Shown here piece by piece: positions 1,498 to 11,407 of a stretch of 11,407 bases of DNA (its first letter is position 1; each line of letters begins with the position of its first letter). The stretch lies in IMG/VR virus record IMGVR_UViG_3300020567_000318, positions 1 to 11,407 of that record; one strand, written 5' to 3'. The position numbers were made by a program, and so were the translations under genes. The notes below the pieces were generated by a model, which saw only the letters and a list, made by a program, of their open reading frames with translations, was not told the origin of the DNA and made no database searches.

Positions 1498-1836
1498 CTA
1501 AAAACCCCTACTCGCCAAGCGCTTTGCCAACCTCCTTGCAAGCTCGTGCCTCAGCGCTCCCAGACTGATGGCGTGGACCTCGCGCTTGAACGCGTCCCTG
1601 ATCCTGCTTTCGACCTCCTCTGGAGGTATGCCCTTGCCCGCACCCGCTAACAAAGATTGAATCGATTCGATCGCTTGTTTGAGGTACGGCTCGGCCTCCT
1701 CCAACGTGGCTCTTCCGCTGGCCACTTCCTCAGCCAGATCTCTGAGCAACGAGTACGCCTCCAGCTTTTCCTTTACGAGCGTTGTGCCCCTGAACAGCTC
1801 GTTGAGAACGTCTATCAGCCTAGGTCCCGCCGCCAC
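1498..1836 (-). CDS. Hypothetical alpha-helical protein (about 112 aa)
   Basis: Same frame as track ORF 1498..1863. The start is reassigned to GTG1836, which follows the SD-like GGGGTGAGG. Amphipathic helices with a basic C-terminus. Confidence 0.7.
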   Translation of the reverse strand: MAAGPRLIDVLNELFRGTTLVKEKLEAYSLLRDLAEEVASGRATLEEAEPYLKQAIESIQSLLAGAGKGIPPEEVESRIRDAFKREVHAISLGALRHELARRLAKRLASRGF

Positions 1837-1969
1837 CCACCTCACCCCTCGCGACCCTCGCAAGAGCTATCAAGATCAGGTCCTGGAGCGTCGTGCCCCG
1901 CTCTTTCGCCCTCCTCTCCAAGATCTCCAAGATACGCTTGGGGACCTTGATCCTGATCTCCTCGCTCAT
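1820..1969 (-). CDS. Small ribbon-helix-helix (CopG/Arc-like) transcriptional regulator, 49 aa
   Basis: Manual translation: MSEEIRIKVPKRILEILERRAKERGTTLQDLILIALARVARGEVGGGGT*. Alternating beta strand (IRIKVP), helix, G-T-T turn, then a second helix. GAGGAGGAG lies directly upstream. Below the track length cut-off. Confidence 0.85.
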   Translation of the reverse strand: MSEEIRIKVPKRILEILERRAKERGTTLQDLILIALARVARGEVGGGGT

Positions 1970-2282
1970 ACTCCTCCTCGCTCTCCGCACCGCTACCACT
2001 TAAAATTTCCTCCTCCATCTTGGCGAGCCTCCTCCCCTTGCCGCTCTTATCGTAAGCGTACTTCCTCAGCCTCTTGATGGCACCCTCCTCGGCACACAAC
2101 AAGCGGAACGAGATCACAACAGTGACAGCGGGCGGCGTATCGGGTGGGGACACGGTCTCGGAGATATCGATCGCCGTGATCAAACCCTGTCTTTGTAGTC
2201 GGCGGGCTACGTAATTCGCGTAGTTGGCGACTTGGTGGGCAACCTTTCGTAAAATCAACACGTACTCGATTGACCCGTCCAT
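1842..2282 (-). CDS. Hypothetical protein (about 146 aa) with an acidic tail overlapping the RHH gene
   Basis: Same frame as track ORF 1842..2417. The start is reassigned to ATG2282 (MDGSIEYVLILRK), 23-28 nt downstream of a TTTAAG box. The longer start would cross the promoter region and overlap MCP1. Confidence 0.65.
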   Translation of the reverse strand: MDGSIEYVLILRKVAHQVANYANYVARRLQRQGLITAIDISETVSPPDTPPAVTVVISFRLLCAEEGAIKRLRKYAYDKSGKGRRLAKMEEEILSGSGAESEEEYERGDQDQGPQAYLGDLGEEGERAGHDAPGPDLDSSCEGREG

Positions 2283-2304
2283 CGAGCGCACAGGCTTGCG
2301 CTCG
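2283..2304. repeat. Perfect 8-bp inverted repeat, candidate operator
   Basis: CGAGCGCA-caggct-TGCGCTCG, which exactly fills the gap between the TATA box (2305-2310) and ATG2282. Confidence 0.7.
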
Positions 2305-2312
2305 CTTAAATA
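2305..2312 (-). promoter_or_regulatory. TATA box for the - strand gene cluster
   Basis: TATTTAAG on the - strand at leaderless-promoter spacing from ATG2282. Confidence 0.6.
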
Positions 2313-2320
2313 CCTTATAC

Positions 2321-2345
2321 CACACCTCCCTGCTCGTAAGGTGTG
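2321..2345. repeat. 7-bp inverted repeat between the divergent promoters
   Basis: CACACCT-N11-AGGTGTG. Confidence 0.5.
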
Positions 2346-2374
2346 CAGAAAGCACGATGGGTCAGCTCTGGTAG

Positions 2375-2380
2375 TTATAT
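2375..2380 (+). promoter_or_regulatory. TATA box for the capsid genes
   Basis: TTATAT 25-30 nt upstream of ATG2405. No SD motif precedes the ATG, consistent with a leaderless mRNA. Confidence 0.6.
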
Positions 2381-2404
2381 CGGTCATGCTCCACACCATC
2401 CACG

Positions 2405-2761
2405 ATGCCGATAACAAAGACGTTGCAGGACCGATTCGAGAAGTTCAGCGCGAAGACGCCCCCCGATGTCACCGGGGCTAGGTACGCCGCTAGCAAGGAG
2501 ATAGCGCTACCCAGGTTCCTGGAGGGGTCCAGCGCGATGGCCGTGATAGTGGAGCTGACTAGGAACATATTGGAAACGGCGGGCGTCCCCGCCGGGCAGC
2601 AGGGAGTTTACTACGGGTTCGCGCAGAGGGCCAGGAAGCTGGCATGGAGCCACAGCGGTGAAACGCTGGCCAAGTTCATCGAGGGGCTGAAGTCAGAGTA
2701 CGTCGCCAAGGGCTGCGACCCGGCCATCCTCGACAAGATCGCTGCGCTAGTAGTTGGTTAG
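2405..2761 (+). CDS. Major capsid protein 1, SIRV2-type (Adnaviria)
   Basis: The N-terminal DRFEKFSAK and the C-terminal ILETAGVPAGQQGVYYGFAQR...GETLAKFIEGLKSEYVAKGCDPAILDKIAALVVG follow the SIRV2 MCP pattern as recalled (QRYAKWQAKF ... YQGFG ... INGLKGYY ... NPQVLD). Clear paralogue of the next gene. Confidence 0.88.
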   Translation: MPITKTLQDRFEKFSAKTPPDVTGARYAASKEIALPRFLEGSSAMAVIVELTRNILETAGVPAGQQGVYYGFAQRARKLAWSHSGETLAKFIEGLKSEYVAKGCDPAILDKIAALVVG

Positions 2762-2775
2762 GGGTGGGATAGGGC

Positions 2776-3156
2776 ATGCCGATCGTTAAGTCCCGGGTAT
2801 CGGACCGGTACGCCAAGTACAACCTAAAGTACCCCGATGCCACCACGATGACTAGCAGGCTGACCGCGGTCAAGGAGATAATGGACCTGCGCTACCAGGC
2901 CGGCTCCTCCGTGATCTACAACGCCGTCGAGGCAACCAGGAACATCTTGGAGTCTAAGGGCGTCCCCGTCGGGCTCCATGGTGCCTACTATGCCTTTGCC
3001 CAAGAGCTGGTGCGGGCGACTTTTAGTCATAGTGGCGCCACCCTCAATGCGATTATCAGCGGTCTAAAGCAGAAGTATGTGACCGCGCACGGCCTGGATG
3101 CGACTATCCTGGACGAGATAGTCAAGACCGTGGTTGGCGTCCTCCCGCCCTACTAG
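2776..3156 (+). CDS. Major capsid protein 2, SIRV2-type (Adnaviria)
   Basis: DRYAKYNLKY...TRNILESKGVPVGLHGAYYAFAQ...SHSGATLNAIISGLKQKYVTAHGLDATILDEIVKTVVG aligns end to end with MCP1. SD-like GGGGTG in the 14-nt spacer. Confidence 0.88.
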   Translation: MPIVKSRVSDRYAKYNLKYPDATTMTSRLTAVKEIMDLRYQAGSSVIYNAVEATRNILESKGVPVGLHGAYYAFAQELVRATFSHSGATLNAIISGLKQKYVTAHGLDATILDEIVKTVVGVLPPY

Positions 3157-3207
3157 CGGGGGTACGGGCGGGGGGAGGGACGCGGCGTAAAAATCATCTA
3201 TTTTTTT
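3137..3207 (+). terminator. Probable terminator region after the capsid genes: GC-rich imperfect hairpin/G-tracts followed by T7
   Basis: GCGTCCTCCCGCCCTAC (3137-3153) can pair, with bulges, with GTACGGGCGGGGGGAGGGACGC (3162-3183). A T7 run lies at 3201-3207. Confidence 0.45.
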
Positions 3208-3223
3208 GCACCATGCTTGACAC

Positions 3224-4267
3224 GTGAGGGTAGCCATCTGCACATCCGATAGATCCGTATCGCTACAGATTGTCGCTAGGGATGTAGCAGAGGTCCTGAG
3301 GTCCCGGGGCCACCTGGTGGACGTCCACCTCTTCGCATTGACAGACCCCAGCATCTACAAGAGGTACGACTCGTGGTTGACGGTCATGACGTTTGACGTG
3401 GTCTGGGCGACCCCGTACTTCTTTGTCGCAAGGTCCGCGAAGGTGCGCGGCCTGCGCTCGCTGTTTTACGCAACTATCGAAGGTAAGGTCTGGGGGCTGT
3501 GGATGCGCGAGTGGATAGTCCGAGACCTGGAGTTTATCGCGTGTAGCAATTACGTCAAGAGGAAGATTGCCGAGGTGGGTGGCAAGGTTGTAGCGGTGGT
3601 GTACCACGGCATAAAGCCAGAGGAGTACGAGGCGGCCAGGACCCTGGGAGCCTCGTTGAGGCGCAGGCTAGGGTTCACGGACAAGGACTTCGTGGTGGCA
3701 TACGTTGCAGCGGACTACCCGAGAAAAGGACATGATCTATTCGCAGAGGTCTGTAGGATCGTGGCGCAGAGGGACCCCAGCATCAAGTTCATCATCGCCA
3801 CTAAGGATGATGCGATCTCACACTACGCTGGGTGCAACAACGTCGTAGCGCTTGACTGGTTCGGGAAGGTCCCCCGCACGGACATTCTAGCGGTCTATGG
3901 GGCGTGCGACCTCTACGCCCAGGCCAGCCTAGCTGAGGGCTTCGGCTTGCCAGTGCTGGAGGCGCTAGCGAGTGGTAAGCCCGTTGTGCACGCGGACTAC
4001 GAACCGCTGAGCGAGATAACGACGCCAGAGACATCCTTCCGCGTCCCCGTCAGGGCGGTCATCGACTACAGAGACACGGGCCCCACAATGGGTGGCATCA
4101 TGTACGAGCACCACATCTACGACCCCTCCGAGTTCGCAGACGTCATCATCCAGGCCAAGGAGGAGGTGGTGTGCAGGAGGGGGGAGCTGGAGGAACTCTG
4201 CAAGCAGAGAGCTAAGGAGTTTGACGCTAGGAAGACCTACTCGGCGTTCGAGGTGCTCTTGCAATGA
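3224..4267 (+). CDS. Glycosyltransferase, GT-B fold, family 4 (Glycos_transf_1)
   Basis: VVYHGI, PRKGHD and the EX7E motif EGFGLPVLEALASGKPVV. Such enzymes are common in rudiviruses and lipothrixviruses. Confidence 0.93.
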   Translation: MRVAICTSDRSVSLQIVARDVAEVLRSRGHLVDVHLFALTDPSIYKRYDSWLTVMTFDVVWATPYFFVARSAKVRGLRSLFYATIEGKVWGLWMREWIVRDLEFIACSNYVKRKIAEVGGKVVAVVYHGIKPEEYEAARTLGASLRRRLGFTDKDFVVAYVAADYPRKGHDLFAEVCRIVAQRDPSIKFIIATKDDAISHYAGCNNVVALDWFGKVPRTDILAVYGACDLYAQASLAEGFGLPVLEALASGKPVVHADYEPLSEITTPETSFRVPVRAVIDYRDTGPTMGGIMYEHHIYDPSEFADVIIQAKEEVVCRRGELEELCKQRAKEFDARKTYSAFEVLLQ

Positions 4268-4268
4268 T

Positions 4269-4277
4269 TTTTTAAGC
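4269..4277 (+). promoter_or_regulatory. T-run/TATA box (possible combined terminator and promoter)
   Basis: TTTTTTAAG directly after the glycosyltransferase stop and 23-31 nt upstream of ATG4300. Confidence 0.55.
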
Positions 4278-4299
4278 GCAAGGCTCTTCCATCCTCCCG

Positions 4300-4656
4300 A
4301 TGGCGCAGGGCGAAGCTAGGAAAAGGTCTAAAAGGGCGGAGCGCAGGGTGGAGGGCGTGGGAGAGACAACGCCAGCTCCTGCGGTAGCCCCTACGGCCAC
4401 CCCCACGGCCACCCCTGAGGTGGCTCAACCGCAACGGAGGGAGCTTACTGAGGAGGAGAAGGAATTCATGAACGCGCTGGCGCAGCTGGTGGAGTCAGCC
4501 CAGGAGCTGTCCTATGCTCTGGCTGTCGTGGATGAGACACGAGATGAGCTGTCGCCAGAGATAAAGGAGGTGCTAGCGACAGCTAGAGCTGTGGTGAGGG
4601 CGGTCTGGAGGTTCCACAGGCTGGTGAGGAAGAGGGCTGGCACCAGGGTGCCATGA
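4300..4656 (+). CDS. Hypothetical protein: basic N-terminus, Pro/Thr/Ala linker, helical C-terminal domain
   Basis: Own TATA-like box, codon usage like its neighbours, and an ATGA overlap with the next gene. Confidence 0.75.
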   Translation: MAQGEARKRSKRAERRVEGVGETTPAPAVAPTATPTATPEVAQPQRRELTEEEKEFMNALAQLVESAQELSYALAVVDETRDELSPEIKEVLATARAVVRAVWRFHRLVRKRAGTRVP

Positions 4657-4943
4657 GCGCGGTTCTGCCAGCCAAGCCGCTCGATGTAGTCATCCCCCCC
4701 GTCGCCATCGACGTGGAGGGGGCCAAAGTCATCATCCTGGAGGTCATCAGGTACACGCGCTTCGATGGTGCCACCCGCTTCCTAGTTTCCTGCCAGGTGG
4801 AGTGCCAGGGCTGGCTGTCGCCCCAGTTCAGGCTTGACGTGAAGGATGAGAGGGACCTCATCAACCAGCTACGGGTCGAAGTGTCGAAGATGCAGCTTCT
4901 GTTGATGTCTGGCTTCACTCGGATCTTCCAGCGCGCTCAATAG
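4653..4943 (+). CDS. Small hypothetical viral protein (beta-rich N-terminal part, C-terminal helix)
   Basis: Translationally coupled by an ATGA overlap and followed by a T7 tract. Contains LDVKDERDLINQLRVEVSK. Confidence 0.75.
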   Translation: MSAVLPAKPLDVVIPPVAIDVEGAKVIILEVIRYTRFDGATRFLVSCQVECQGWLSPQFRLDVKDERDLINQLRVEVSKMQLLLMSGFTRIFQRAQ

Positions 4944-4992: not shown

Positions 4993-7900
4993 ATGGAGGG
5001 GATGGACTGGGATGCGATCACGCCAGAGGATGCGCAGTACATCATCTCGATGCTCGACAGACTAAGAGATGTCGAGATCGGCTCAACGATACCAACCATC
5101 AGCATCGGTGAGCTGGACCTCGATGCGCTCGCCAGCTCTCTGGCTGGCATCACTGACCCCATAGGCCAGATTCAGAGCTGGTTCCAGGACCAACTGAGGG
5201 CTCTCACGTCGTGGTTCAGCAGCGCGGTCGACAGCCTGTTCCGATCGCTCTACAACACGCTCATCAAGCCAACATTGAGCGCAATAGCTGGTGGCGTCGA
5301 CTGGATCAGGAGCAACCTTCAGTCGATCGCGAGCACCGTAACATCATCGCTGGGCCAGATCGCCACGCTCGTGAGCAACCTGGGGTCCTCCATCGCTTCC
5401 ATATTGAGCGCGATAGCGCAACTTCCCTCCGCGATATGGAACCAGTTGCAGAGCGTATCCAGCGCGATAATCAGCAGCCTGTCCAGCGCCATCGCGTCCG
5501 TGGTCGCGAAGGTTTCGGATGCGCTGGGCGGGCTTAGGAGCTGGCTCTCCAGTGCGCTCTCCAACGTGATCAGCGGCATCGCGGGCCTGGCATCTACCAT
5601 ATCCGGAGCCATATCTCAGATAACGGGCGCGATTTCGAGTGCAATGGACGCGGTGGTGAAGGCGATAACGCAAATACCTGGCGTTGTGTCCGCCCTCATA
5701 TCAAGGCTACAGGAGTGGATAGGGGGGGCGTTCGCGGGGTTGCAGAAGTGGGTGGGAGAGAGGCTGGAGGGCATACTTGACGCGCTGGGCAGGGCGCTCG
5801 CGACGCTGTCTGACGCTCTGAGGGGCTTGCAGTCGTGGCTAGCCGCCACCTTGGCCGGTGTCGTATCCGGGTTGCGGGACCTGCTGTCCAGCTCTTTATC
5901 TGCAATCGGTAACTGGATAGCCGAGGCCACGAAGCGCTTGCAGGACATCGGGTACGTGTTCCAGGGGTTCGTGAACGCCATACTGAGGGTACCGGAGATG
6001 CTGGGGAGCATACTGGCCAACATATTCAAGCCAGTGGTGGACTTCCTGGGTTCTATAGCTCAGGCGATACTGAACTTCTTTGCCGATCCCGTTGGTACGC
6101 TACGAAGGGCGTTCGAGTGGCTGGCGAAACAGATCTGGGACCTGCTACCTAGCTGGCTCAAGGATGCGATTATCGCGTTGCAGAACGCCTGGAACAGCTT
6201 TGTTCAAGGGCTACAGGACTTCCTAAGGGATCCCTTGGGCTTCATCCAGCGTGGCTTCAGCTGGCTGGCGGAGCAAATCTGGAAGCTGTTACCAGATTGG
6301 CTCAAGGGAGCGATCGTTGCAATACAGAACGCTTGGAACACATTCGTTCAAGGGCTCCAGGACTTCATCAAGGACCCCATAGGCTTCATACGCGCGAGGT
6401 TTGAGGAGCTGGCGAAATGGATCTGGGAGCACCTGCCAGAGCCAGCGAAACAACTCATAGAGAAGATCCGCGATTGGATTTTGGGCGCGTGGGACTTCCT
6501 GTACAAGCTGTTCACCAAGTACCTGCCAGAGGCGATAGGGTGGGCGTGGAACGAGTTGCAGAGGTTCATAGCCAACCCGCTGAACTACATATGGGAAAAG
6601 CTACTGGGGCTGTGGGAGTGGATATCCAAGCAGCTCGCAGGCGTGTGGAACGTGCTAAGGGGCGCCTGGGACTGGTTCGTGGGGGCGTTGCGTGGCGCGT
6701 GGGACTGGCTCGTGTCAGCTGTCAGCGCGATCCCGCAGGTGATACTCACATCTCTGCGCGTGCTGGGAGAGACGGTCTTGAACCTGGCCAAGAGCGTTGG
6801 TGAGGCGCTCGCTGGCGTGTTCGGCGCTATCGTGAGGGAGGTGGCGAAGCCCTTCCAGCCACTGGTCGAGGTCGTTGGGCAGTACATGATGCAGGTGCTG
6901 GGGCCACTGGCGCCCAAAGAGCGGGCGCCACTCTTCGTGGACACCATGGTACGCTCGGGCACGGCGCTGATGGTGACGTCGCTCTACGCAGCTGGCATAG
7001 CGACCATACCGCTCATGCTCACGAAGGCAACTAAGGCTGGCGGTCACGCCGTCAAGTCGCTCCTGGAGCGGATCGGCATAGACCTGGACGGCCACCTGCA
7101 ACTCCTGATGGACGTTGGCCTAAGTGGGACTAAGGTTGGCGGGAGGGGAGGGGGTGGCGCCAGGTTCAGCATATCATCGAAGTTGGTGTCAGCGCTGGGG
7201 GAGGCGATAAACGAGCTTGGAGACGCCTTCGACAAGTACGCATCGAGCATACTACAATATGCGGTTCTCTGGACCACGGAGCCCCTGGGCTCGGCCATAG
7301 GCCGCTACTCAGCATACTTCATACGCGACCTCATCCCGGTTGAGCTACCGGGGCTCGATCAGCTGGTGGATTTCGCCAGGAGGGTCAAGGGGGTAGATAA
7401 GCCAGAGGAGTACCTGAAGGCGCTCAACTACTACGTGTCGCTTTACGGCTACTCGACGTATTTCGTGGAGCAGGTATTCGGCTTCACGCTGAATGAGGAG
7501 AAGATACCGGTCATAGAGATCCGCGACAGGTTCTACGATGTGAGCAGGGCGGTGAGGAAGGTCCCCATAGCGCTCATCTACGAGCTACCGAGCGCGTCTG
7601 ATGTGGCCGCGATGATGGTGCGCGACATCTTCTACTCGTACGATGACTTCATCAAGCTGGCGAGGGCCAGGGGCATGCCAGAGGACATCGCTGCGCTCTA
7701 CTACATCTACAGGTTCAAGTACCCGTCACCCGAGCAGCTCTTCGAGTTCTACTGGCGCGGTGTGTCTGGCGTCCTCTGGTACGCACCCAGGCAGCTGATG
7801 ACCGATGAGGAGAGGTCCACGCTGCTGGAGAGGCTGAAGGTGGGTGCCGAGCCCAGGCCACCGGCGGCGCTGAACTTCGACATCTCAACGCTCTCTGACA

Positions 7901-9909
7901 TGATAGGAACCTACATGAAGTGGCACGACCTGTTCCCAGCAGCTTGGGAGGCTGGCTTCACGAGCGACAGGGCGATAGTCATGGACCTAGCGGCGGAGAT
8001 GCCCGATAAGATAGATGTGCGCTGGATGCTCCGCTACGCAATCTTCGAGCTACTGGCAAGCAAGGGCATAACGCGCGAGACGCCCGTACCGCAGCTGAGG
8101 AACGTGCTGGAGGACGCGGCAACGAACAAGGAGGTCCTCATGGACCTGTCGATGGTGTGCAGGTTGCTACAGGCCCGGGGCCTGCACCCATACTTCGTGC
8201 CGTTCATAGCTGTCGCGGACACGCTAGCTGCGCTGGCGGATGAGCGCACGCTAGTGCGCTCGGGCTTCATAAACCTCTACGAGCGGGGCGCCCTGGACGT
8301 GAAGACGCTCGACAAGCTGCTCTCCAACCTAGTTGTAGCGTCGTTCAAGGTGTCATACTTCGACATAGAGCGGGGCACGTGGGTCGACAACAAGTACGTG
8401 AACGTCCCGGTGGCCTACCTGCCAGCAGAGCGCAAGCTGATAGAGTTGCGCGCACTGCTCGACAAGTTCGAGAGGCCATGGCGCGAGGTGTGGAGCGACC
8501 TGGAGACCGCGTACAGGGAGTACATCTTGGACGCAAGCTCAGCCATGATGGCCGCAACGGCGGTCGCCAAGGCGATCAATGAGTTGCTACCAGAGGAGTC
8601 CAAGGCGCTAGTGGGCACGGAGTACAAGCTCACCGTTGATGAGGACTACCTGAAGACACTGCTAAAGTCGTGGGAGGTTGCTAGAGAGGTCTACACGATA
8701 CGGAGGATTAGGTCCTGGGTCTACCGTGTTTTGGGCTGGCTGATATACAGAGTGGCTTACGGGTACGTTAGGCCCAGCGACCTGGACTCCCTAGCCAGCA
8801 CATTATCTGAGGTAGCCAGGCTACCGCAAGCGGAGAGGGAGGCGATCGCTACAATCACCAAGGCGGTGTGGCGGATCGCAACGAGGGAGTACATACCCAC
8901 GCCATCGCAGCTGGCCACGATAGCCGAGGTCGTGCCAGCCGCGCTCAAGTACGTGGATGACGTGCTGGAGGCTCTGAACGTGCCAGAGGAGTGGAGGCCA
9001 ATATGGAGGTCCTACATCACAGTGAAGCCAATAGCGGATGAGGTGAGGACGCTGGTGAGCTACTACTACCGCGCGAAGAGGTACGGCGTAACGTTGCCGG
9101 ATGATGTGGTCAAGGCCGTCGAGGCGCTCATGAGCGAGGTGGGGTACACGGACAGGGAGAAGGCGATACTGGACCTCGCGGCGTACATATACAACGTAAC
9201 GGAGGAGATGAGAAAGGAGGCGAGCGAGGTCATACCGTCGCTCTCCATGCTGGCATCGATGGCGGAGTACATCGACGTCCCGCTCGACTACGTGGCGAAG
9301 GTCATGGCAGCGAGGCGGGTCGAGAGGACGTACGCTGAGCTGTGGCTGAAGTACGTGTCAGCGAGAACGATAGCGAGCGAGGTCAACCGCGTCTCAAACA
9401 CGCTACGTAGCCTGTACGAGCACTTCGCTGTGCCCGATGACGTGGTCAAGGCGGTTGCGGATCTGATGAAACGGGGCGGGTGGACATCGAGGGAGCTTGC
9501 GATATTCCAGTTCGACCTGGAGCTGAGGAGGAGGTACCGCATCCTCAACACGCTGGTGCCAACCCTGCGGCAGTTTGTCACAGATGCCCTGTACTTAGGC
9601 GAGTGGGAGAGGCTACTGGAGGACTGGCTAGCAGCGAGAGGCATCGAAGCCGAAAAGTACAAGCAACAAGTAGAGTACTACAAGAAGCTGATAAAGTCCC
9701 GCAAGCTCAACAGGCGCCTGTCCTGGTTCATCGCGCGCCTGATGAACGCGTACTGCGCTGGCATCATTACCTTGGATGAAGCGAGAAAGCGACTGGAGCA
9801 GTTCAAGGACTACGGCTTGGATGATGATGAGATAAAGATCCTCCTTGCTGGCTTCGAGCTGGAGAGGGCGTACAGGCAAGCAGTGTACGGCAGAGGGGGA
9901 GGCGCGTAG
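4993..9909 (+). CDS. Very large minor structural protein (1638 aa): tape-measure-like amphipathic N-terminal part and helical repeat C-terminal part, candidate terminal/tail structure component
   Basis: Uninterrupted ORF. The first ~630 aa are amphipathic Ala/Ser/Ile/Trp helices, and a P-[ST]-x-x-[QDM]-[LV] motif recurs in the C-terminal part. Size and position resemble the large minor virion proteins of Ligamenvirales (for example SIRV2 P1070). The function is inferred. Confidence 0.75.
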   Translation: MEGMDWDAITPEDAQYIISMLDRLRDVEIGSTIPTISIGELDLDALASSLAGITDPIGQIQSWFQDQLRALTSWFSSAVDSLFRSLYNTLIKPTLSAIAGGVDWIRSNLQSIASTVTSSLGQIATLVSNLGSSIASILSAIAQLPSAIWNQLQSVSSAIISSLSSAIASVVAKVSDALGGLRSWLSSALSNVISGIAGLASTISGAISQITGAISSAMDAVVKAITQIPGVVSALISRLQEWIGGAFAGLQKWVGERLEGILDALGRALATLSDALRGLQSWLAATLAGVVSGLRDLLSSSLSAIGNWIAEATKRLQDIGYVFQGFVNAILRVPEMLGSILANIFKPVVDFLGSIAQAILNFFADPVGTLRRAFEWLAKQIWDLLPSWLKDAIIALQNAWNSFVQGLQDFLRDPLGFIQRGFSWLAEQIWKLLPDWLKGAIVAIQNAWNTFVQGLQDFIKDPIGFIRARFEELAKWIWEHLPEPAKQLIEKIRDWILGAWDFLYKLFTKYLPEAIGWAWNELQRFIANPLNYIWEKLLGLWEWISKQLAGVWNVLRGAWDWFVGALRGAWDWLVSAVSAIPQVILTSLRVLGETVLNLAKSVGEALAGVFGAIVREVAKPFQPLVEVVGQYMMQVLGPLAPKERAPLFVDTMVRSGTALMVTSLYAAGIATIPLMLTKATKAGGHAVKSLLERIGIDLDGHLQLLMDVGLSGTKVGGRGGGGARFSISSKLVSALGEAINELGDAFDKYASSILQYAVLWTTEPLGSAIGRYSAYFIRDLIPVELPGLDQLVDFARRVKGVDKPEEYLKALNYYVSLYGYSTYFVEQVFGFTLNEEKIPVIEIRDRFYDVSRAVRKVPIALIYELPSASDVAAMMVRDIFYSYDDFIKLARARGMPEDIAALYYIYRFKYPSPEQLFEFYWRGVSGVLWYAPRQLMTDEERSTLLERLKVGAEPRPPAALNFDISTLSDMIGTYMKWHDLFPAAWEAGFTSDRAIVMDLAAEMPDKIDVRWMLRYAIFELLASKGITRETPVPQLRNVLEDAATNKEVLMDLSMVCRLLQARGLHPYFVPFIAVADTLAALADERTLVRSGFINLYERGALDVKTLDKLLSNLVVASFKVSYFDIERGTWVDNKYVNVPVAYLPAERKLIELRALLDKFERPWREVWSDLETAYREYILDASSAMMAATAVAKAINELLPEESKALVGTEYKLTVDEDYLKTLLKSWEVAREVYTIRRIRSWVYRVLGWLIYRVAYGYVRPSDLDSLASTLSEVARLPQAEREAIATITKAVWRIATREYIPTPSQLATIAEVVPAALKYVDDVLEALNVPEEWRPIWRSYITVKPIADEVRTLVSYYYRAKRYGVTLPDDVVKAVEALMSEVGYTDREKAILDLAAYIYNVTEEMRKEASEVIPSLSMLASMAEYIDVPLDYVAKVMAARRVERTYAELWLKYVSARTIASEVNRVSNTLRSLYEHFAVPDDVVKAVADLMKRGGWTSRELAIFQFDLELRRRYRILNTLVPTLRQFVTDALYLGEWERLLEDWLAARGIEAEKYKQQVEYYKKLIKSRKLNRRLSWFIARLMNAYCAGIITLDEARKRLEQFKDYGLDDDEIKILLAGFELERAYRQAVYGRGGGA
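6076..6450 (+). repeat. In-frame tandem repeat, 144 bp (48 aa) unit, about 2.6 copies
   Basis: Units start at 6076, 6220 and 6364: FFADPVGTLRRAFEWLAKQIWDLLPSWLKDAIIALQNAWNSFVQGLQD / FLRDPLGFIQRGFSWLAEQIWKLLPDWLKGAIVAIQNAWNTFVQGLQD / FIKDPIGFIRARFEELAKWIWEHLPE. Confidence 0.9.
8890..9890 (+). repeat. Three degenerate ~110-aa protein repeats
   Basis: Units start YIPTPSQL (8890), VIPSLSML (9229) and LVPTLRQF (9553). PDDVVKAV recurs exactly at 9097 and 9433, 336 bp apart. Confidence 0.75.
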
Positions 9910-10192: not shown

Positions 10193-11407
10193 ATGGGCTA
10201 CGCACAAAGAGAGGTAGCAAAGGTAGTAGAGCAGAAGCTGAAGTATTGGCTGAAGACGCAGAGCGAGGACGCGATAGACGCGATGTTCGACCGCATGTTC
10301 GACACCTACGATCGCCTCTCGTTCTGGGGGGACTGGGTGCTCTCGGACACACTCTTCTCATCCCTCATCTCGCTGGCGTTCTTCGACTTGCCAATACCGG
10401 AGATCGTGCCGTGGAGCCTGGTGTGGGAGGTGGAGTTGCCATCTATCGATGAGTTCCTCGCTGGCGTCCTCATCAAGCTGGAGCCCATCGACGTGACGGC
10501 GGTCTTCCCCGAGCTATCGGAGGTCCTCAGCTCCCTCAAGCTCCTCCTGACCAGCGAGTACGCACAGAACATACAGGAAACCAGGGTTAGGAAGCTGATT
10601 GTTGGCGAGAGCTACTACGGTGATAGCTACGTGGACCCGCCAGCGGTCAGGGAGTTCCTGCGCTCGACGCTCTACGCGTTCACGAAGAAAGACCTGACGT
10701 GGCAGGCGGTAAGGGATAGGTTGCGCGTGGCCGCGAAGACGTGGAACGTCCACGAGAGGCTCGTTGAGGACGCGTTCAACAGGCTCTCGATGATATCGGC
10801 AGTAAAGGAGCGGGCGCTGACGTGGGACTACGGCTGGTGGGACCGTAGCTATTGGGCGGAGGAGGGCAGCGGTGGCGAGGTCGCTTTCATCAATTACGAG
10901 GGTCAGGAGGTCAAGGCGGAGTACGAGCACCTAGCGGATCCGCAGTTTGGAGGTTACTGGGACATGAGCTACTGGGACATGTTCTACTGGGCCGCGCCCG
11001 AATCCCCGTACAAGCCAGCGGTTGGCCTTGAGGACCCAACCGTATCGAAGGTGCGCGACTTCGTAGTGCAGAACTTCAGGAGCAGGATACACGTAACACC
11101 ACTAGCTGTGGCTAACTACCAGACAGCGGAGGGCAGGACATCGTGGAGCGAGTCGCCACGCACGGAGACCTACGCAATTCCCTTGTCCATGCGGTACAGG
11201 ATCGAGTCGCTGGTCGACAGCATGGTCAAGCAGCTGAAGCCCGATGTTGGCGTCTTCCAGCTCAGGTTGTACAAAACTGCCGTGCTGGACCTGTTCGGCT
11301 CGCTTTACTCCCCCCACAGGTGGGGGGAGGAGGCCCTGCGCGCGTCATCCAAGGAGGAGCTGAGGAGCTTCTGGATCGAGAAGTGGAAGGCTCAGGGCCT
11401 GGATGAA
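10193..11407 (+). CDS. Probable minor virion protein with aromatic repeats and a C-terminal MCP-like segment, runs off the right edge of the window
   Basis: Manual translation gives 405 codons with no stop: MGYAQREVAKVVEQKLKYWLKTQSEDAIDAMFDRMFD...GESYYGDSYVDPPAVREFLRST...WDYGWWDRSYW...GGYWDMSYWDMFYW...FWIEKWKAQGLDE. Not in the track. It follows the giant gene, as the ~560-aa structural gene does in rudiviruses (recalled). Confidence 0.85.
   Translation, partial: MGYAQREVAKVVEQKLKYWLKTQSEDAIDAMFDRMFDTYDRLSFWGDWVLSDTLFSSLISLAFFDLPIPEIVPWSLVWEVELPSIDEFLAGVLIKLEPIDVTAVFPELSEVLSSLKLLLTSEYAQNIQETRVRKLIVGESYYGDSYVDPPAVREFLRSTLYAFTKKDLTWQAVRDRLRVAAKTWNVHERLVEDAFNRLSMISAVKERALTWDYGWWDRSYWAEEGSGGEVAFINYEGQEVKAEYEHLADPQFGGYWDMSYWDMFYWAAPESPYKPAVGLEDPTVSKVRDFVVQNFRSRIHVTPLAVANYQTAEGRTSWSESPRTETYAIPLSMRYRIESLVDSMVKQLKPDVGVFQLRLYKTAVLDLFGSLYSPHRWGEEALRASSKEELRSFWIEKWKAQGLDE

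What the first reader, a model, noticed from the sequence alone, without database searches (positions are those of the whole stretch)
2405..3156. Closely similar tandem capsid paralogues suggest a heterodimeric capsomer
Seen: the two proteins align end to end (MPI, DR[FY]xK, KEI, GSS, TRNILE, GVP, YYxFAQ, SHSGxTL, GLK, ILD, VVG) and share a promoter. Established: rudiviruses use an MCP homodimer in rigid naked rods, while lipothrixviruses and tristromaviruses use heterodimers of paralogues in flexible enveloped filaments. Inference: this pair is still obviously alike and rudivirus-like, so it may show an early stage of the homodimer-to-heterodimer transition or an independent duplication.
Basis: partly seen in the sequence, partly recalled or inferred. 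Interest (0 to 1): 0.7.

Follow-up and report, generated by a model that had tools for sequence, protein, structure and literature searches.

The report
Paired capsid genes, archaeal filamentous virus
Two adjacent genes encode full-length, 49%-identical copies of the rudivirus-type capsid protein; the pair is old and conserved across a widespread, apparently undescribed group of hot-environment archaeal viruses, and it probably forms a mixed (heterodimeric) DNA-wrapping unit, which was not tested here.

Summary
ORFs 2405-2761 (118 aa) and 2776-3156 (126 aa) align end to end (49% identity, E 3e-34). Both pass the Pfam threshold for the rudivirus coat protein. Both fold, by prediction, into the SIRV2/SSRV1 capsid fold.

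The window is an IMG/VR contig of an uncultivated virus. Its MCP - glycosyltransferase - P1070-like fibre module resembles the rudivirus one.

The pair is not a young duplication:
- The same first-then-second arrangement is in all 22 distinct loci that hold both genes, found by exact-protein look-up and the viral- and genome-contig scans.
- It is also in all 55 metagenome loci with room for both genes (a few are the same contigs as in that first set). GC content spans 35-71%.
- Each copy forms its own orthologue group, synonymous sites are saturated, and both copies are under purifying selection.
- Within-genome identity is 25-50%, and this window is the most similar pair seen.

A conserved Shine-Dalgarno-like spacer of 12-26 nt (one of 51) and a T-run only after the second gene fit one transcript.

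A heterodimeric capsomer is the best reading (about 0.55) but is inferred. Some rudiviruses carry an upstream capsid paralogue that is reported not to enter virions; that copy lacks the DNA-binding arm, and both copies here keep it.

Trees favour a lineage-specific duplication but do not exclude an older shared one. Verdict: a new member of a known kind, of moderate interest.

The parts
1842..2282 (-). Divergently transcribed conserved gene upstream of the capsid pair; function unknown. The mechanical ORF runs to 2417, but the real start is probably near 2282.
   Evidence: 68% identity to the 117-aa gene at the same position in L003; the match begins at residue 51 of the long ORF. A gene of this size and strand sits upstream of the pair in related loci.
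2283..2404 (.). Intergenic region between the divergent gene and the first capsid gene. It holds a TATA-like box, TTATAT, at 2375-2380, about 27 nt before the ATG, which implies a leaderless mRNA.
   Evidence: Read from the sequence. The same A/T box at the same distance is present in the two closest relatives, L002 and L003; more distant relatives instead have a GAGGTG-type ribosome-binding site before the first gene. Inferred, not shown.
2405..2761 (+). First capsid paralogue ('first', 118 aa): a full-length SIRV2-fold major capsid protein with an N-terminal arm and a C-terminal helix bundle.
   Evidence: PF12193 at 41.3 bits. PDB 6wq0 and 3j9x by sequence. AF2 model pLDDT 87.4 with helices 7-17, 20-59, 63-82, 85-101 and 106-117. 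Foldseek best matches 3j9x (TM 0.62) and 6wq0 (TM 0.60). Its orthologue clade has support 94/92.
2762..2775 (+). 14-nt spacer with a Shine-Dalgarno-like GGGTGGG motif. There is no T-run and no A/T box.
   Evidence: Among the 13 loci whose spacers were read, 11 spacers are 12-26 nt and one is 51 nt, and these 12 carry a GGTGA(G)/GGTG motif; the L014 start is uncertain.
2776..3156 (+). Second capsid paralogue ('second', 126 aa): a full-length SIRV2-fold major capsid protein with a copy-specific C-terminal tail ending in P-x-Y.
   Evidence: PF12193 at 47.8 bits. PDB 6wq0 at E 1e-6. AF2 pLDDT 86.0. Foldseek 3j9x and 6wq0 both at TM 0.70. The terminal Tyr is present in 16 of 16 second copies and absent from first copies.
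3201..3207 (+). Run of 7 T, 45 nt after the stop of the second gene. It is a candidate archaeal terminator of the two-gene unit and may also be part of the A/T-rich promoter of the next gene.
   Evidence: A run of at least 6 T lies downstream of the second gene, within the 110 nt read, in all 13 loci compared, and none lies between the two capsid genes. The bacterial-type terminator scan finds nothing, as expected for an archaeal virus.
3224..4267 (+). GT4-family glycosyltransferase, syntenic with the glycosyltransferase that follows the capsid gene in rudiviruses.
   Evidence: PF00534 at E 9e-21. phrog_2170 at E 2.5e-34, the same PHROG as SIRV2 ORF335, which follows the SIRV2 capsid gene ORF134 with one short opposite-strand ORF between. 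Present after the pair in all longer relatives.
4300..4943 (+). Two small conserved genes (118 aa and 96 aa) between the glycosyltransferase and the giant protein; function unknown.
   Evidence: Genes of about 85-107 aa and about 85-92 aa occupy the same slots in relatives. No family match.
4993..9909 (+). Giant protein (1638 aa), a homologue of the rudivirus minor structural / terminal-fibre protein SIRV2 P1070. It has a tape-measure-like repetitive N-terminal part.
   Evidence: phrog_7334 at E 2.5e-30; SIRV2 ORF1070 is the type of that PHROG. BLASTP to SIRV2 ORF1070 gives E 1e-10, with matches that include the N- and C-terminal parts of both proteins. A 144-nt internal tandem repeat lies at 6118-6430.
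10193..11407 (+). ORF that runs off the 3' end of the contig (about 405 aa held). It occupies the slot of the ~440-aa protein that follows the fibre gene in relatives.
   Evidence: Open frame seen by direct translation. Relatives have a 440-444-aa gene here. No PHROG match for the L007 homologue.

Best explanation
The window is part of the genome of an uncultivated filamentous archaeal virus (realm Adnaviria, Ligamenvirales-like). Its structural module matches the rudivirus one: capsid gene(s), then a GT4 glycosyltransferase, then a P1070-like terminal-fibre protein.

Instead of the single rudivirus capsid gene it has two full-length paralogues of the SIRV2-fold capsid protein. They appear to be made from one bicistronic transcript: a TATA-like box before the first gene, a Shine-Dalgarno-like spacer before the second, and a T-run after the second.

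The pair arose by one old tandem duplication. It has been kept, in the same order, through the whole radiation of this lineage.

The most likely mechanism is the one solved for AFV1, SFV1, SIFV and PFV2. One molecule of each paralogue forms a pseudo-symmetric heterodimer. Its two N-terminal helical arms wrap about 12 bp of A-form DNA, and the dimers stack into a helical filament.

Shown here: paralogy, fold class, synteny, conservation, purifying selection on both copies, and retention of the basic N-terminal arm in both.

Inferred: co-transcription, heterodimer formation, A-form DNA, and virion morphology.
For: Paralogy and fold:
- 49% identity, E 3e-34.
- PF12193 above threshold for both.
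- Profile to SSRV1 and SIRV2 capsid chains at E 1e-20 and 3e-19.
- AF2 models at pLDDT 87 and 86, with best Foldseek hits 3j9x and 6wq0.

Rudivirus-like module:
- Glycosyltransferase in the same PHROG as SIRV2 ORF335, and the giant protein in the PHROG of SIRV2 P1070.

Conservation of the pair:
- Both genes are adjacent in the same order in every viral, assembly and MAG locus fetched.
- The same holds in 55 of 55 metagenome loci with room for both.
- Second copies form 34 clusters at 90% identity.

Both copies functional:
- Between orthologues pN is 0.10-0.30 against saturated pS of 0.58-0.90; dN/dS is 0.07-0.27 where it can be computed.
- 28 columns are conserved in both copies, including the basic residues of the N-terminal arm: K13/14, K17/18, R26/28, K31/33, R37/39.
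- 5 columns are fixed differently between the copies: 4 in the arm plus the C-terminal Tyr.

One old duplication followed by co-divergence:
- The first clade has support 94/92 and most second copies 80/90.
- Orthologue distance matrices correlate, r = 0.85.
- Within-genome identity between the copies (0.42) equals between-genome identity (0.41), so there is no gene conversion.

Operon signals:
- The spacer is 12-26 nt in 11 of the 13 loci read and 51 nt in one (the L014 start is uncertain); those 12 spacers carry a conserved GGTGA-type motif. A T-run follows only the second gene in all 13.

Precedent:
- All non-rudivirid adnaviruses with solved virions use heterodimers of two paralogous MCPs.
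- The two genes are adjacent in AFV1. In SIFV I take them to be the adjacent ORFs 0035/0036 (the assignment is from my own knowledge, the record calls both hypothetical).
Against: Nothing here shows that the two proteins touch each other or that both are in the virion. No multimer prediction, proteomics or transcript data were available.

A real precedent points the other way. Rudiviruses SSRV1, ARV2, MRV1 and ARV3 carry a capsid paralogue directly upstream of the capsid gene. The second paralogue of rudiviruses is reported not to be incorporated into virions (PMC10848311; also PMC9894754).

Divergence between the copies is spread evenly (identity 0.40 in the arm, 0.43 in the bundle). It is not concentrated at an obvious interface.

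The promoter and terminator are motif-level inferences only.
Confidence: 0.55

Rival explanations
1. Only one copy builds the filament, most likely the second, more ancestral-like one, as a homodimer as in rudiviruses. The upstream copy is then a non-virion or accessory paralogue (chaperone, scaffold, decoy or regulator), like SSRV1 gp10.
For: SSRV1 gp10, ARV3 gp13 and their homologues in ARV2 and MRV1 sit in the same position: directly upstream of the capsid gene, on the same strand, with a glycosyltransferase downstream. The literature says such second paralogues are not incorporated. Single-MCP relatives and rudivirus MCPs mostly score higher against the 'second' profile than the 'first', for example 105 against 86 bits and 101 against 82 bits. 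The second copy's model is closer to the SIRV2 chain (TM 0.70 against 0.62). Holding the rudivirus short paralogues with the 'first' clade is not rejected (3.6 lnL lower, p-AU 0.45).
Against: The rudivirus paralogue is truncated. It aligns only to bundle positions 37-116 of the profile, lacks the whole DNA-wrapping arm, is 22% identical to its MCP, and is separated from it by an 81-nt A/T-rich spacer with its own T-run. Here the first copy is full length and keeps the arm and its conserved basic residues. It is as constrained as the second copy. It is joined to the second copy by a 12-26-nt ribosome-binding spacer. The rudivirus short paralogue shows no special affinity for the 'first' profile (34.0 against 36.2 bits).
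Confidence: 0.22
2. Both proteins are in the virion but not as a 1:1 heterodimer. Each forms homodimers that either mix along the filament or occupy distinct zones, for example body against ends.
For: At 36-50% identity with the same predicted fold, each protein may have kept the ancestral self-interface. Nothing here measures interface preference. Divergence is not concentrated in any one region.
Against: No solved adnavirus shows this arrangement; all two-MCP virions solved are 1:1 heterodimers. Tight translational linkage, a fixed gene order and parallel evolutionary rates fit stoichiometric partners better. Single-chain two-domain MCP proteins in distant relatives suggest that the dimer of two different halves is the selected unit.
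Confidence: 0.13
3. One reading: a recent duplication caught early in the homodimer-to-heterodimer transition.
For: This window has the most similar pair seen (49-50%), and the DNA of the two genes still aligns over 77 nt.
Against: Each copy has orthologues in every related genome, and the two orthologue sets co-diverge. Synonymous sites between the copies are saturated. The copies are only slightly more distant from each other than the most distant orthologues are. There is no excess within-genome similarity. Other members have pairs down to 25% identity.
Confidence: 0.04

Closest known systems
Rudiviridae major capsid protein (SIRV2 ORF134, PDB 3j9x; SSRV1 gp11, PDB 6wq0)
   Same: Same Pfam family (PF12193) and same predicted fold (TM 0.60-0.70). 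Same length class. Same neighbourhood: a glycosyltransferase of the same PHROG downstream and a P1070-like fibre protein.
   Different: Only 23-28% identity. There are two full-length copies here instead of one. No nucleotide similarity to any deposited genome, and few other shared gene families. GC is 58% against 26% for the SIRV2 stretch fetched. The contigs are binned with Thermofilaceae, Desulfurococcales and other Thermoprotei rather than Sulfolobales.
SSRV1 gp10/gp11, and ARV3 gp13/gp14 (also ARV2, MRV1): tandem 'putative coat protein' plus MCP in some rudiviruses
   Same: A capsid paralogue lies immediately upstream of the canonical capsid gene on the same strand, with a glycosyltransferase downstream. 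A common origin with the 'first' copy is not rejected.
   Different: The rudivirus paralogue is a 108-109-aa bundle-only protein without the DNA-binding arm. It is 22% identical to its MCP, is separated from it by an 81-nt A/T-rich spacer with a T-run, and is reported absent from virions. Here both copies are full length and tightly linked.
AFV1 (Ungulaviridae) MCP1/MCP2 = ORF132/ORF140, PDB 5w7g; lipothrixvirus pairs (SIFV, SFV1)
   Same: Two adjacent, co-oriented paralogous SIRV2-fold capsid genes. This is the solved model for how such a pair works, a pseudo-symmetric heterodimer on A-form DNA. The AFV1 pair is 30% identical, which is inside the 25-50% range seen in this lineage.
   Different: Weak sequence similarity: profile E 5e-7 and 2e-5 for AFV1, 0.17 for SIFV. 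In the best tree the AFV1 proteins group with each other, not one with each copy here, although the alternative is not rejected. Whether this virus is enveloped is unknown.
Chiyouviridae (Bathyarchaeia chiyouvirus 1, IMGVR_UViG_3300022544_000008)
   Same: An uncultivated hot-spring Ligamenvirales-like virus with a SIRV2-like MCP, a GT4 glycosyltransferase and a P1070-like fibre. It occurs in the same metagenome as relative L008.
   Different: Chiyouvirus has one 124-aa MCP followed directly by the glycosyltransferase. Its second MCP-like gene is 249 aa and lies about 11 kb away (genes 14 and 23). That layout matches the single-MCP loci L022, L031 and L033, not the adjacent pair here.
Tristromaviridae (PFV2 MCP1/MCP2, PDB 6v7b)
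   Same: Filamentous viruses of neutrophilic Thermoproteales with two paralogous MCPs forming a heterodimer. The host range is similar to that suggested by the MAG bins.
   Different: No detectable sequence similarity: 6v7b is absent from all PDB searches and from the matches listed by the fold searches. The published work also reports no sequence similarity between PFV2 MCPs and ligamenviral MCPs.

Membership tests
SIRV2-type (Adnaviria) major capsid protein, Pfam PF12193 Sulf_coat_C | Sequence match above the curated family threshold | tested here: met
   41.3 and 47.8 bits against a cut-off of 25.2. Profile against the PDB chains of SSRV1 and SIRV2 gives E 1e-20 and 3e-19.
SIRV2-type (Adnaviria) major capsid protein, Pfam PF12193 Sulf_coat_C | All-alpha fold: extended N-terminal helical arm plus C-terminal four-helix bundle | tested here: met
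   AF2 models at pLDDT 87.4 and 86.0, each with five helices. Foldseek top hits are 3j9x and 6wq0 (TM 0.60-0.70), then AFV1 ORF140. The bundle-only crystal structure 3f2e matches at rmsd 1.2 and 1.8. These are predictions, not solved structures.
SIRV2-type (Adnaviria) major capsid protein, Pfam PF12193 Sulf_coat_C | Dimer wraps linear dsDNA and holds it in the A-form | not testable with these tools
   Only indirect support: conserved basic residues in the arm of both copies.
Rudiviridae | A single MCP that forms a homodimeric capsomer | tested here: not met
   There are two full-length MCP genes in this genome and in every relative that could show them. Whether one of them still acts as a homodimer is untested.
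Rudiviridae | Shared structural module: MCP, GT4 glycosyltransferase, P1070-like fibre protein | tested here: met
   phrog_2170 and phrog_7334 are shared with SIRV2 ORF335 and ORF1070.
Rudiviridae | Genome-wide relatedness to known rudiviruses (gene content, nucleotide similarity); Sulfolobales hosts | tested here: not met
   No megablast match for the window in 50,697 phage and archaeal-virus records. Of 10 further proteins of relative L007, 8 have no PHROG match and 2 match PHROGs not examined further. MCP identity is 23-28%. MAG bins are Thermofilaceae, Desulfurococcales and Thermoprotei; binning is weak host evidence.
Rudiviridae | Linear genome with inverted terminal repeats | not testable with these tools
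   The window is a partial 11.4-kb contig, and no terminal repeats were found in it. Related contigs reach 35.5 kb, but their ends were not fetched.
Two-MCP adnaviruses (Lipothrixviridae, Ungulaviridae, Tristromaviridae type of capsomer) | Two paralogous SIRV2-fold MCP genes, adjacent and co-oriented | tested here: met
   For comparison, AFV1 ORF140/ORF132 are adjacent, as are the ORFs I take to be the SIFV MCPs, 0036/0035 (assignment from my own knowledge).
Two-MCP adnaviruses (Lipothrixviridae, Ungulaviridae, Tristromaviridae type of capsomer) | Both proteins present 1:1 in the virion as a heterodimer | not testable with these tools
   No multimer prediction or proteomics was available. This is inferred only from conservation, operon signals and precedent.
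Two-MCP adnaviruses (Lipothrixviridae, Ungulaviridae, Tristromaviridae type of capsomer) | Each copy orthologous to the established MCP1 or MCP2 lineage | tested here: inconclusive
   The AFV1 and SIFV MCPs score alike against the first- and second-copy HMMs. The AFV1 pair is monophyletic at 99/98. Placing ORF140 with 'first' is not rejected (p-AU 0.136).
Two-MCP adnaviruses (Lipothrixviridae, Ungulaviridae, Tristromaviridae type of capsomer) | Lipid envelope, flexible filament | not testable with these tools
   No sequence marker of envelopment is known to me, and none was sought.
Chiyouviridae | One canonical MCP followed by the glycosyltransferase, plus a distant 249-aa second MCP-like gene; Bathyarchaeia host | tested here: not met
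   The published gene table differs from the adjacent 118/126-aa pair here. The chiyouvirus layout matches the single-MCP loci L022, L031 and L033. These fall outside the pair clade in the best tree, with support 72/92.7.

The most novel reading that the evidence does not exclude
The tandem MCP pair may be ancestral to Ligamenvirales rather than a late, lineage-specific invention. On this reading the upstream 'first' copy here and the truncated upstream 'putative coat protein' of SSRV1, ARV2, ARV3 and MRV1 descend from the same duplication. The textbook rudivirus homodimer would then be a secondary simplification (heterodimer to homodimer), and this lineage would keep the intact ancestral state. 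A related reading is that the family repeatedly reinvents the asymmetric dimer: independent tandem duplications here, in AFV1-like viruses and in distant relatives, where the two halves have even fused into one chain (P0060, P0148). Either reading would make this lineage, whose paralogues still align at 25-50% identity, the best available system for reconstructing how a symmetric capsomer becomes asymmetric or the reverse.
Probability: 0.25. Interest if true: 0.65.

Novelty: new member of a known kind. Interest (0 to 1): 0.42.

Why it matters
Filamentous archaeal viruses (Adnaviria) package A-form DNA with dimers of one unusual capsid fold. How the symmetric homodimer of rudiviruses relates to the asymmetric heterodimers of the enveloped families is an open evolutionary question. 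In most solved heterodimer-forming viruses the two paralogues are hard to align with each other or with rudivirus MCPs.

This lineage helps for three reasons:
- It has dozens of natural genomes in which both paralogues are full length, clearly rudivirus-like and still alignable.
- Single-MCP relatives and the truncated-paralogue rudiviruses are available as comparators.
- It therefore allows a structural and ancestral-state study of symmetry breaking in a capsomer.

It also extends Ligamenvirales-like viruses to neutrophilic and marine Thermoprotei, in hot springs and in Guaymas and Pescadero sediments.

The mechanism itself, two paralogous MCPs forming a heterodimer, is already the rule for adnaviruses outside Rudiviridae. 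The finding is therefore useful rather than surprising.

Tried and rejected
- **Bacterial promoter and terminator scan:** nothing found, and it is not informative for an archaeal virus.
- **tRNA, Rfam and inverted-repeat scans of the window:** nothing relevant.
- **Reference genomes:** chiyouvirus PP467602 and ahmunvirus OP413840 are not in the collection, so I could not compare their MCPs directly. I used the published chiyouvirus gene table instead.
- **Wang et al. 2020 PNAS (PMC7443925):** this is the primary source for 'second rudivirus paralogue not in virions'. It is not held, so that statement is second-hand.
- **Genome-contig scan:** it failed with the mixed alignment A1 and was repeated with second copies only.
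- **Regional concentration of divergence between the paralogues:** none found.
- **Gene conversion between the copies:** rejected, because within-genome and between-genome identity are equal.
- **Deep tree resolution:** with about 124 columns the relations among the first clade, the second clade, rudivirus MCPs, single-MCP metagenomic MCPs, AFV1 MCPs and rudivirus short paralogues are not resolved. The quick search was visibly unreliable, since a constrained tree beat it by 18.7 lnL. I therefore rely only on the careful searches and AU tests.
- **Literature:** five searches, the last restricted to 2021 onward, found no description of this pair-bearing lineage. The library lacks most subscription journals.
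Full report
**1. What is there**

The window is the whole of IMG/VR contig IMGVR_UViG_3300020567_000318. Two ORFs on the + strand occupy the flagged interval: 2405-2761 (118 aa, 'first') and 2776-3156 (126 aa, 'second'), 14 nt apart.

They align from the first residue to the last shared glycine with 49% identity, 3 gaps and E 3e-34. A 77-nt stretch of the two genes is still 70% identical at the DNA level.

**2. What the proteins are**

- Both exceed the curated Pfam threshold for PF12193, the Sulfolobus rod-shaped-virus coat protein (41.3 and 47.8 bits, cut-off 25.2).
- Their best matches among solved structures are the capsid proteins of the rudiviruses SSRV1 (6wq0) and SIRV2 (3j9x).
- A profile of 33 relatives reaches E 1e-20 and 3e-19 for these two. 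It reaches 5e-7 and 2e-5 for AFV1 ORF140 and ORF132, 3e-5 for 6d5f (which I take to be SFV1, from my own knowledge; the PDB record names the chain a fimbrial protein), and 0.17 for SIFV. It finds nothing for the tristromavirus PFV2.
- AlphaFold2 models (pLDDT 87.4 and 86.0) have a short helix, a 40-residue helix and a three-helix C-terminal part.
- Foldseek ranks 3j9x and 6wq0 first for both models (TM 0.62 and 0.60 for the first copy, 0.70 and 0.70 for the second), followed by AFV1 ORF140.
- Identity to rudivirus MCPs is only 23-28%.

**3. Genomic setting**

Downstream of the pair lie:
- a GT4 glycosyltransferase (3224-4267);
- two small genes (4300-4943);
- a 1638-aa protein (4993-9909);
- an 82-aa gene;
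- an ORF that runs off the contig end (from 10193).

The glycosyltransferase falls in phrog_2170. This is the family of SIRV2 ORF335, which follows the SIRV2 capsid gene with one short opposite-strand ORF between. The giant protein falls in phrog_7334, whose type member is the SIRV2 minor structural / terminal-fibre protein ORF1070. BLASTP between the two gives E 1e-10, with matches that include the N- and C-terminal parts of both proteins.

So the structural module is rudivirus-like. Beyond it there is little in common with known viruses. The window has no megablast match among 50,697 deposited phage and archaeal-virus genomes. Of ten further proteins of a 35-kb relative, eight match no PHROG.

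**4. The pair is a conserved, old feature of a large lineage**

Protein and locus searches recovered relatives from several sources:
- IMG/VR;
- JGI, ENA and Logan assemblies;
- NCBI MAGs labelled Thermofilaceae, Desulfurococcales and Thermoprotei;
- one Thermotogae MAG, which is evidently mis-binned.

The samples include terrestrial springs and Guaymas and Pescadero sediments.

An HMM scan shows first-then-second, adjacent on one strand, in every one of these loci. A separate metagenome scan returned 61 loci. All 55 with sequence on both sides have the same arrangement, and the six others are cut by a contig end. GC content ranges from 35 to 71%, and second copies fall into 34 clusters at 90% identity. 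The synteny pair - glycosyltransferase - two small genes - giant protein (1200-2300 aa) - ~440-aa protein is kept in the longer loci.

**5. Age and mode of the duplication**

- In a careful ML tree the first copies form one clade (94/92). All but one of the second copies form another (80/90). The internal groupings repeat in both clades: window/L002/L003, L006/L010/L018, L016/L017/L019/L026/L027/L030, and L012/L014 (recovered among second copies only).
- Pairwise distances of first-copy and second-copy orthologues correlate (r = 0.85).
- Identity between the copies is the same within a genome (0.42) as between genomes (0.41), so there is no gene conversion.
- Synonymous sites are saturated even between the closest genomes and between the two copies in the window (pS 0.58-0.90). 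Non-synonymous differences between orthologues are 0.10-0.30, and dN/dS is 0.07-0.27 where it can be computed. Both genes are therefore under purifying selection.
- Orthologues are on average 43% different, and up to 61-64% different, against about 58% between the two copies. The duplication is thus only a little older than the crown of the lineage.
- Within-genome identity is 36-50% in the first set of loci and 25-47% (median 41%) in 47 metagenome pairs. The window has the most similar pair seen.
- AFV1's two MCPs are 30% identical over 116 columns. The contrast with known heterodimer pairs is therefore one of degree.

**6. Where the duplication sits in the family**

A search of 1.84 billion representative proteins found 395 family members at E <= 1e-3.

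In the best careful tree, first and second copies together form one side of a branch against rudivirus and other MCPs. Support is only moderate (72/92.7). Mean identities fit that picture: 49% within each copy, 36% between copies, 30% to the nearest other group, and 23-25% to SIRV2.

The nearest outside sequences that I could place on DNA show a single canonical MCP followed by a glycosyltransferase-like gene (L022, L025, L031-L033). This is the layout published for chiyouvirus, which has a second, 249-aa MCP-like gene about 11 kb away. 'Single' here therefore means single at this locus.

On the AFV1 pair:
- AFV1 ORF132 and ORF140 group with each other (99/98) and near the second-copy clade.
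- Copy-specific HMMs give them, and the SIFV MCPs, equal scores.
- Forcing ORF140 to the first clade costs only 9.4 lnL (p-AU 0.136), so it is not excluded either.

**7. A precedent that cuts both ways**

The rudiviruses SSRV1, ARV2, MRV1 and ARV3 carry a 108-109-aa 'putative coat protein' directly upstream of the capsid gene on the same strand. Two papers state that in dual-MCP rudiviruses only one copy is used for the virion (PMC10848311; PMC9894754). The primary source was not available to me. This is the strongest rival to the heterodimer reading.

The rudivirus paralogue is a different object, however:
- It aligns only to the helix bundle (profile positions 37-116) and has no DNA-wrapping arm.
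- It is 22% identical to its MCP.
- It is followed by an 81-nt A/T-rich spacer with its own T-run.

In the present lineage the upstream copy is full length. It shares with the downstream copy the conserved basic residues of the arm, among 28 columns conserved in both copies. The few columns fixed differently between copies are four arm positions and the C-terminal P-x-Y tail of the second copy.

Phylogenetically the short rudivirus paralogues sit among the single-MCP sequences. Holding them with the first clade costs only 3.6 lnL (p-AU 0.45). A single older duplication, with truncation or loss in rudiviruses, therefore remains possible.

**8. Expression signals (inferred)**

- The real start of the divergent upstream gene is near 2282, which leaves a 122-nt intergenic region.
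- A TTATAT box at 2375-2380 lies about 27 nt before the ATG of the first gene, the spacing expected for a leaderless crenarchaeal mRNA. The same box is in L002 and L003, while more distant relatives have a GAGGTG-type ribosome-binding site instead.
- Between the two capsid genes the spacer is 12-26 nt in 11 of 13 loci. It is 51 nt in one, and one start is uncertain. These 12 spacers contain a GGTGA(G)-type motif.
- No spacer has a T-run, whereas every locus has a run of at least 6 T downstream of the second gene, within the 110 nt read (3201-3207 in the window).

This fits one bicistronic unit. No transcript data were available.

**9. Most likely mechanism**

By analogy with the solved virions of AFV1, SFV1, SIFV and PFV2, one first-copy and one second-copy molecule would form a pseudo-two-fold heterodimer. 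Its arms would enclose A-form DNA. Unlike the strictly two-fold rudivirus homodimer, this would give the filament polarity.

I put this at about 0.55. I put the 'one copy only in the virion' rival at about 0.22. I put mixed or zonal homodimers at about 0.13. Whether the particle is enveloped or rigid cannot be told from sequence.

**10. Novelty**

Two adjacent paralogous MCPs are the rule for adnaviruses other than rudivirids, so the mechanism is known.

New, as far as five literature searches, the last limited to 2021 onward, could show, is the lineage itself. It is a diverse, widely distributed group of Ligamenvirales-like viruses associated with neutrophilic and marine Thermoprotei. It has a rudivirus-like structural module and two full-length, still-alignable MCPs.

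I rate it a new member of a known kind, with moderate interest. Its value is as a tractable system for the homodimer/heterodimer question, together with the fused and truncated variants noted in passing.

Noticed in passing
L035:95-871 (P0060); L097:2497-3249 and L098:738-1490 (P0148); also P0091, P0118, P0107: Distant members of the same capsid family are single chains with two complete MCP domains. In P0060 (258 aa) the halves are 67% identical as protein and 80% as DNA, so this is a recent tandem duplication fused into one ORF. P0148 (250 aa, divergent halves) occurs on 11 contigs. These look like covalently linked capsomers. The 249-aa 'second MCP' of chiyouvirus may be of this type.
   Followed up: partly
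L099:4675-5001 (SSRV1 gp10) and L100:1201-1530 (ARV3 gp13); also ARV2 6326-6646 and MRV1 4083-4406: Four cultivated rudiviruses carry an arm-less, bundle-only MCP paralogue directly upstream of the capsid gene, in the same position as the 'first' copy here. A common origin with the 'first' copy is not rejected by the AU test (p 0.45).
   Followed up: partly
window 6118-6430: A 144-nt (48-aa) tandem repeat of about 2.2 copies at 74-78% identity lies inside the P1070-like giant protein. It sits in the tape-measure-like N-terminal part, where many PHROG tape-measure families also match.
   Followed up: no
window against L003, and all pair-bearing loci: GC content varies from 35% to 71% across the lineage. 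The window (58% GC) and L003 (45% GC) still share 84% identical second-copy proteins, which implies a large and fairly fast compositional shift, presumably tracking different hosts.
   Followed up: no
window 10193-11407: A long ORF of about 405 aa runs off the 3' end of the contig and is therefore missing from the mechanical ORF list. It occupies the slot of the conserved ~440-aa protein that follows the fibre gene in relatives.
   Followed up: partly
window 1498-2417, minus strand: A stack of overlapping minus-strand ORFs includes a 59-aa ribbon-helix-helix-like protein (1820-1999; weak CopG match). The 191-aa ORF 1842-2417 probably has its real start near 2282. Gene calls here need care.
   Followed up: partly
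L028, L029 (QNAP01000186.1, QNAP01000147.1): Two contigs of this archaeal-virus lineage are deposited inside a MAG labelled Thermotogae bacterium (Guaymas B41_G15). This is almost certainly a binning error. Host labels taken from MAG bins for these viral contigs should be treated as weak.
   Followed up: no
L008 (JGI 3300022544, Ga0212120_1001024): The same hot-spring metagenome that yielded the published chiyouvirus genome (Ga0212120_1000794) also holds a 22-kb contig of the pair-bearing lineage. The two kinds of Ligamenvirales-like virus therefore co-occur.
   Followed up: no
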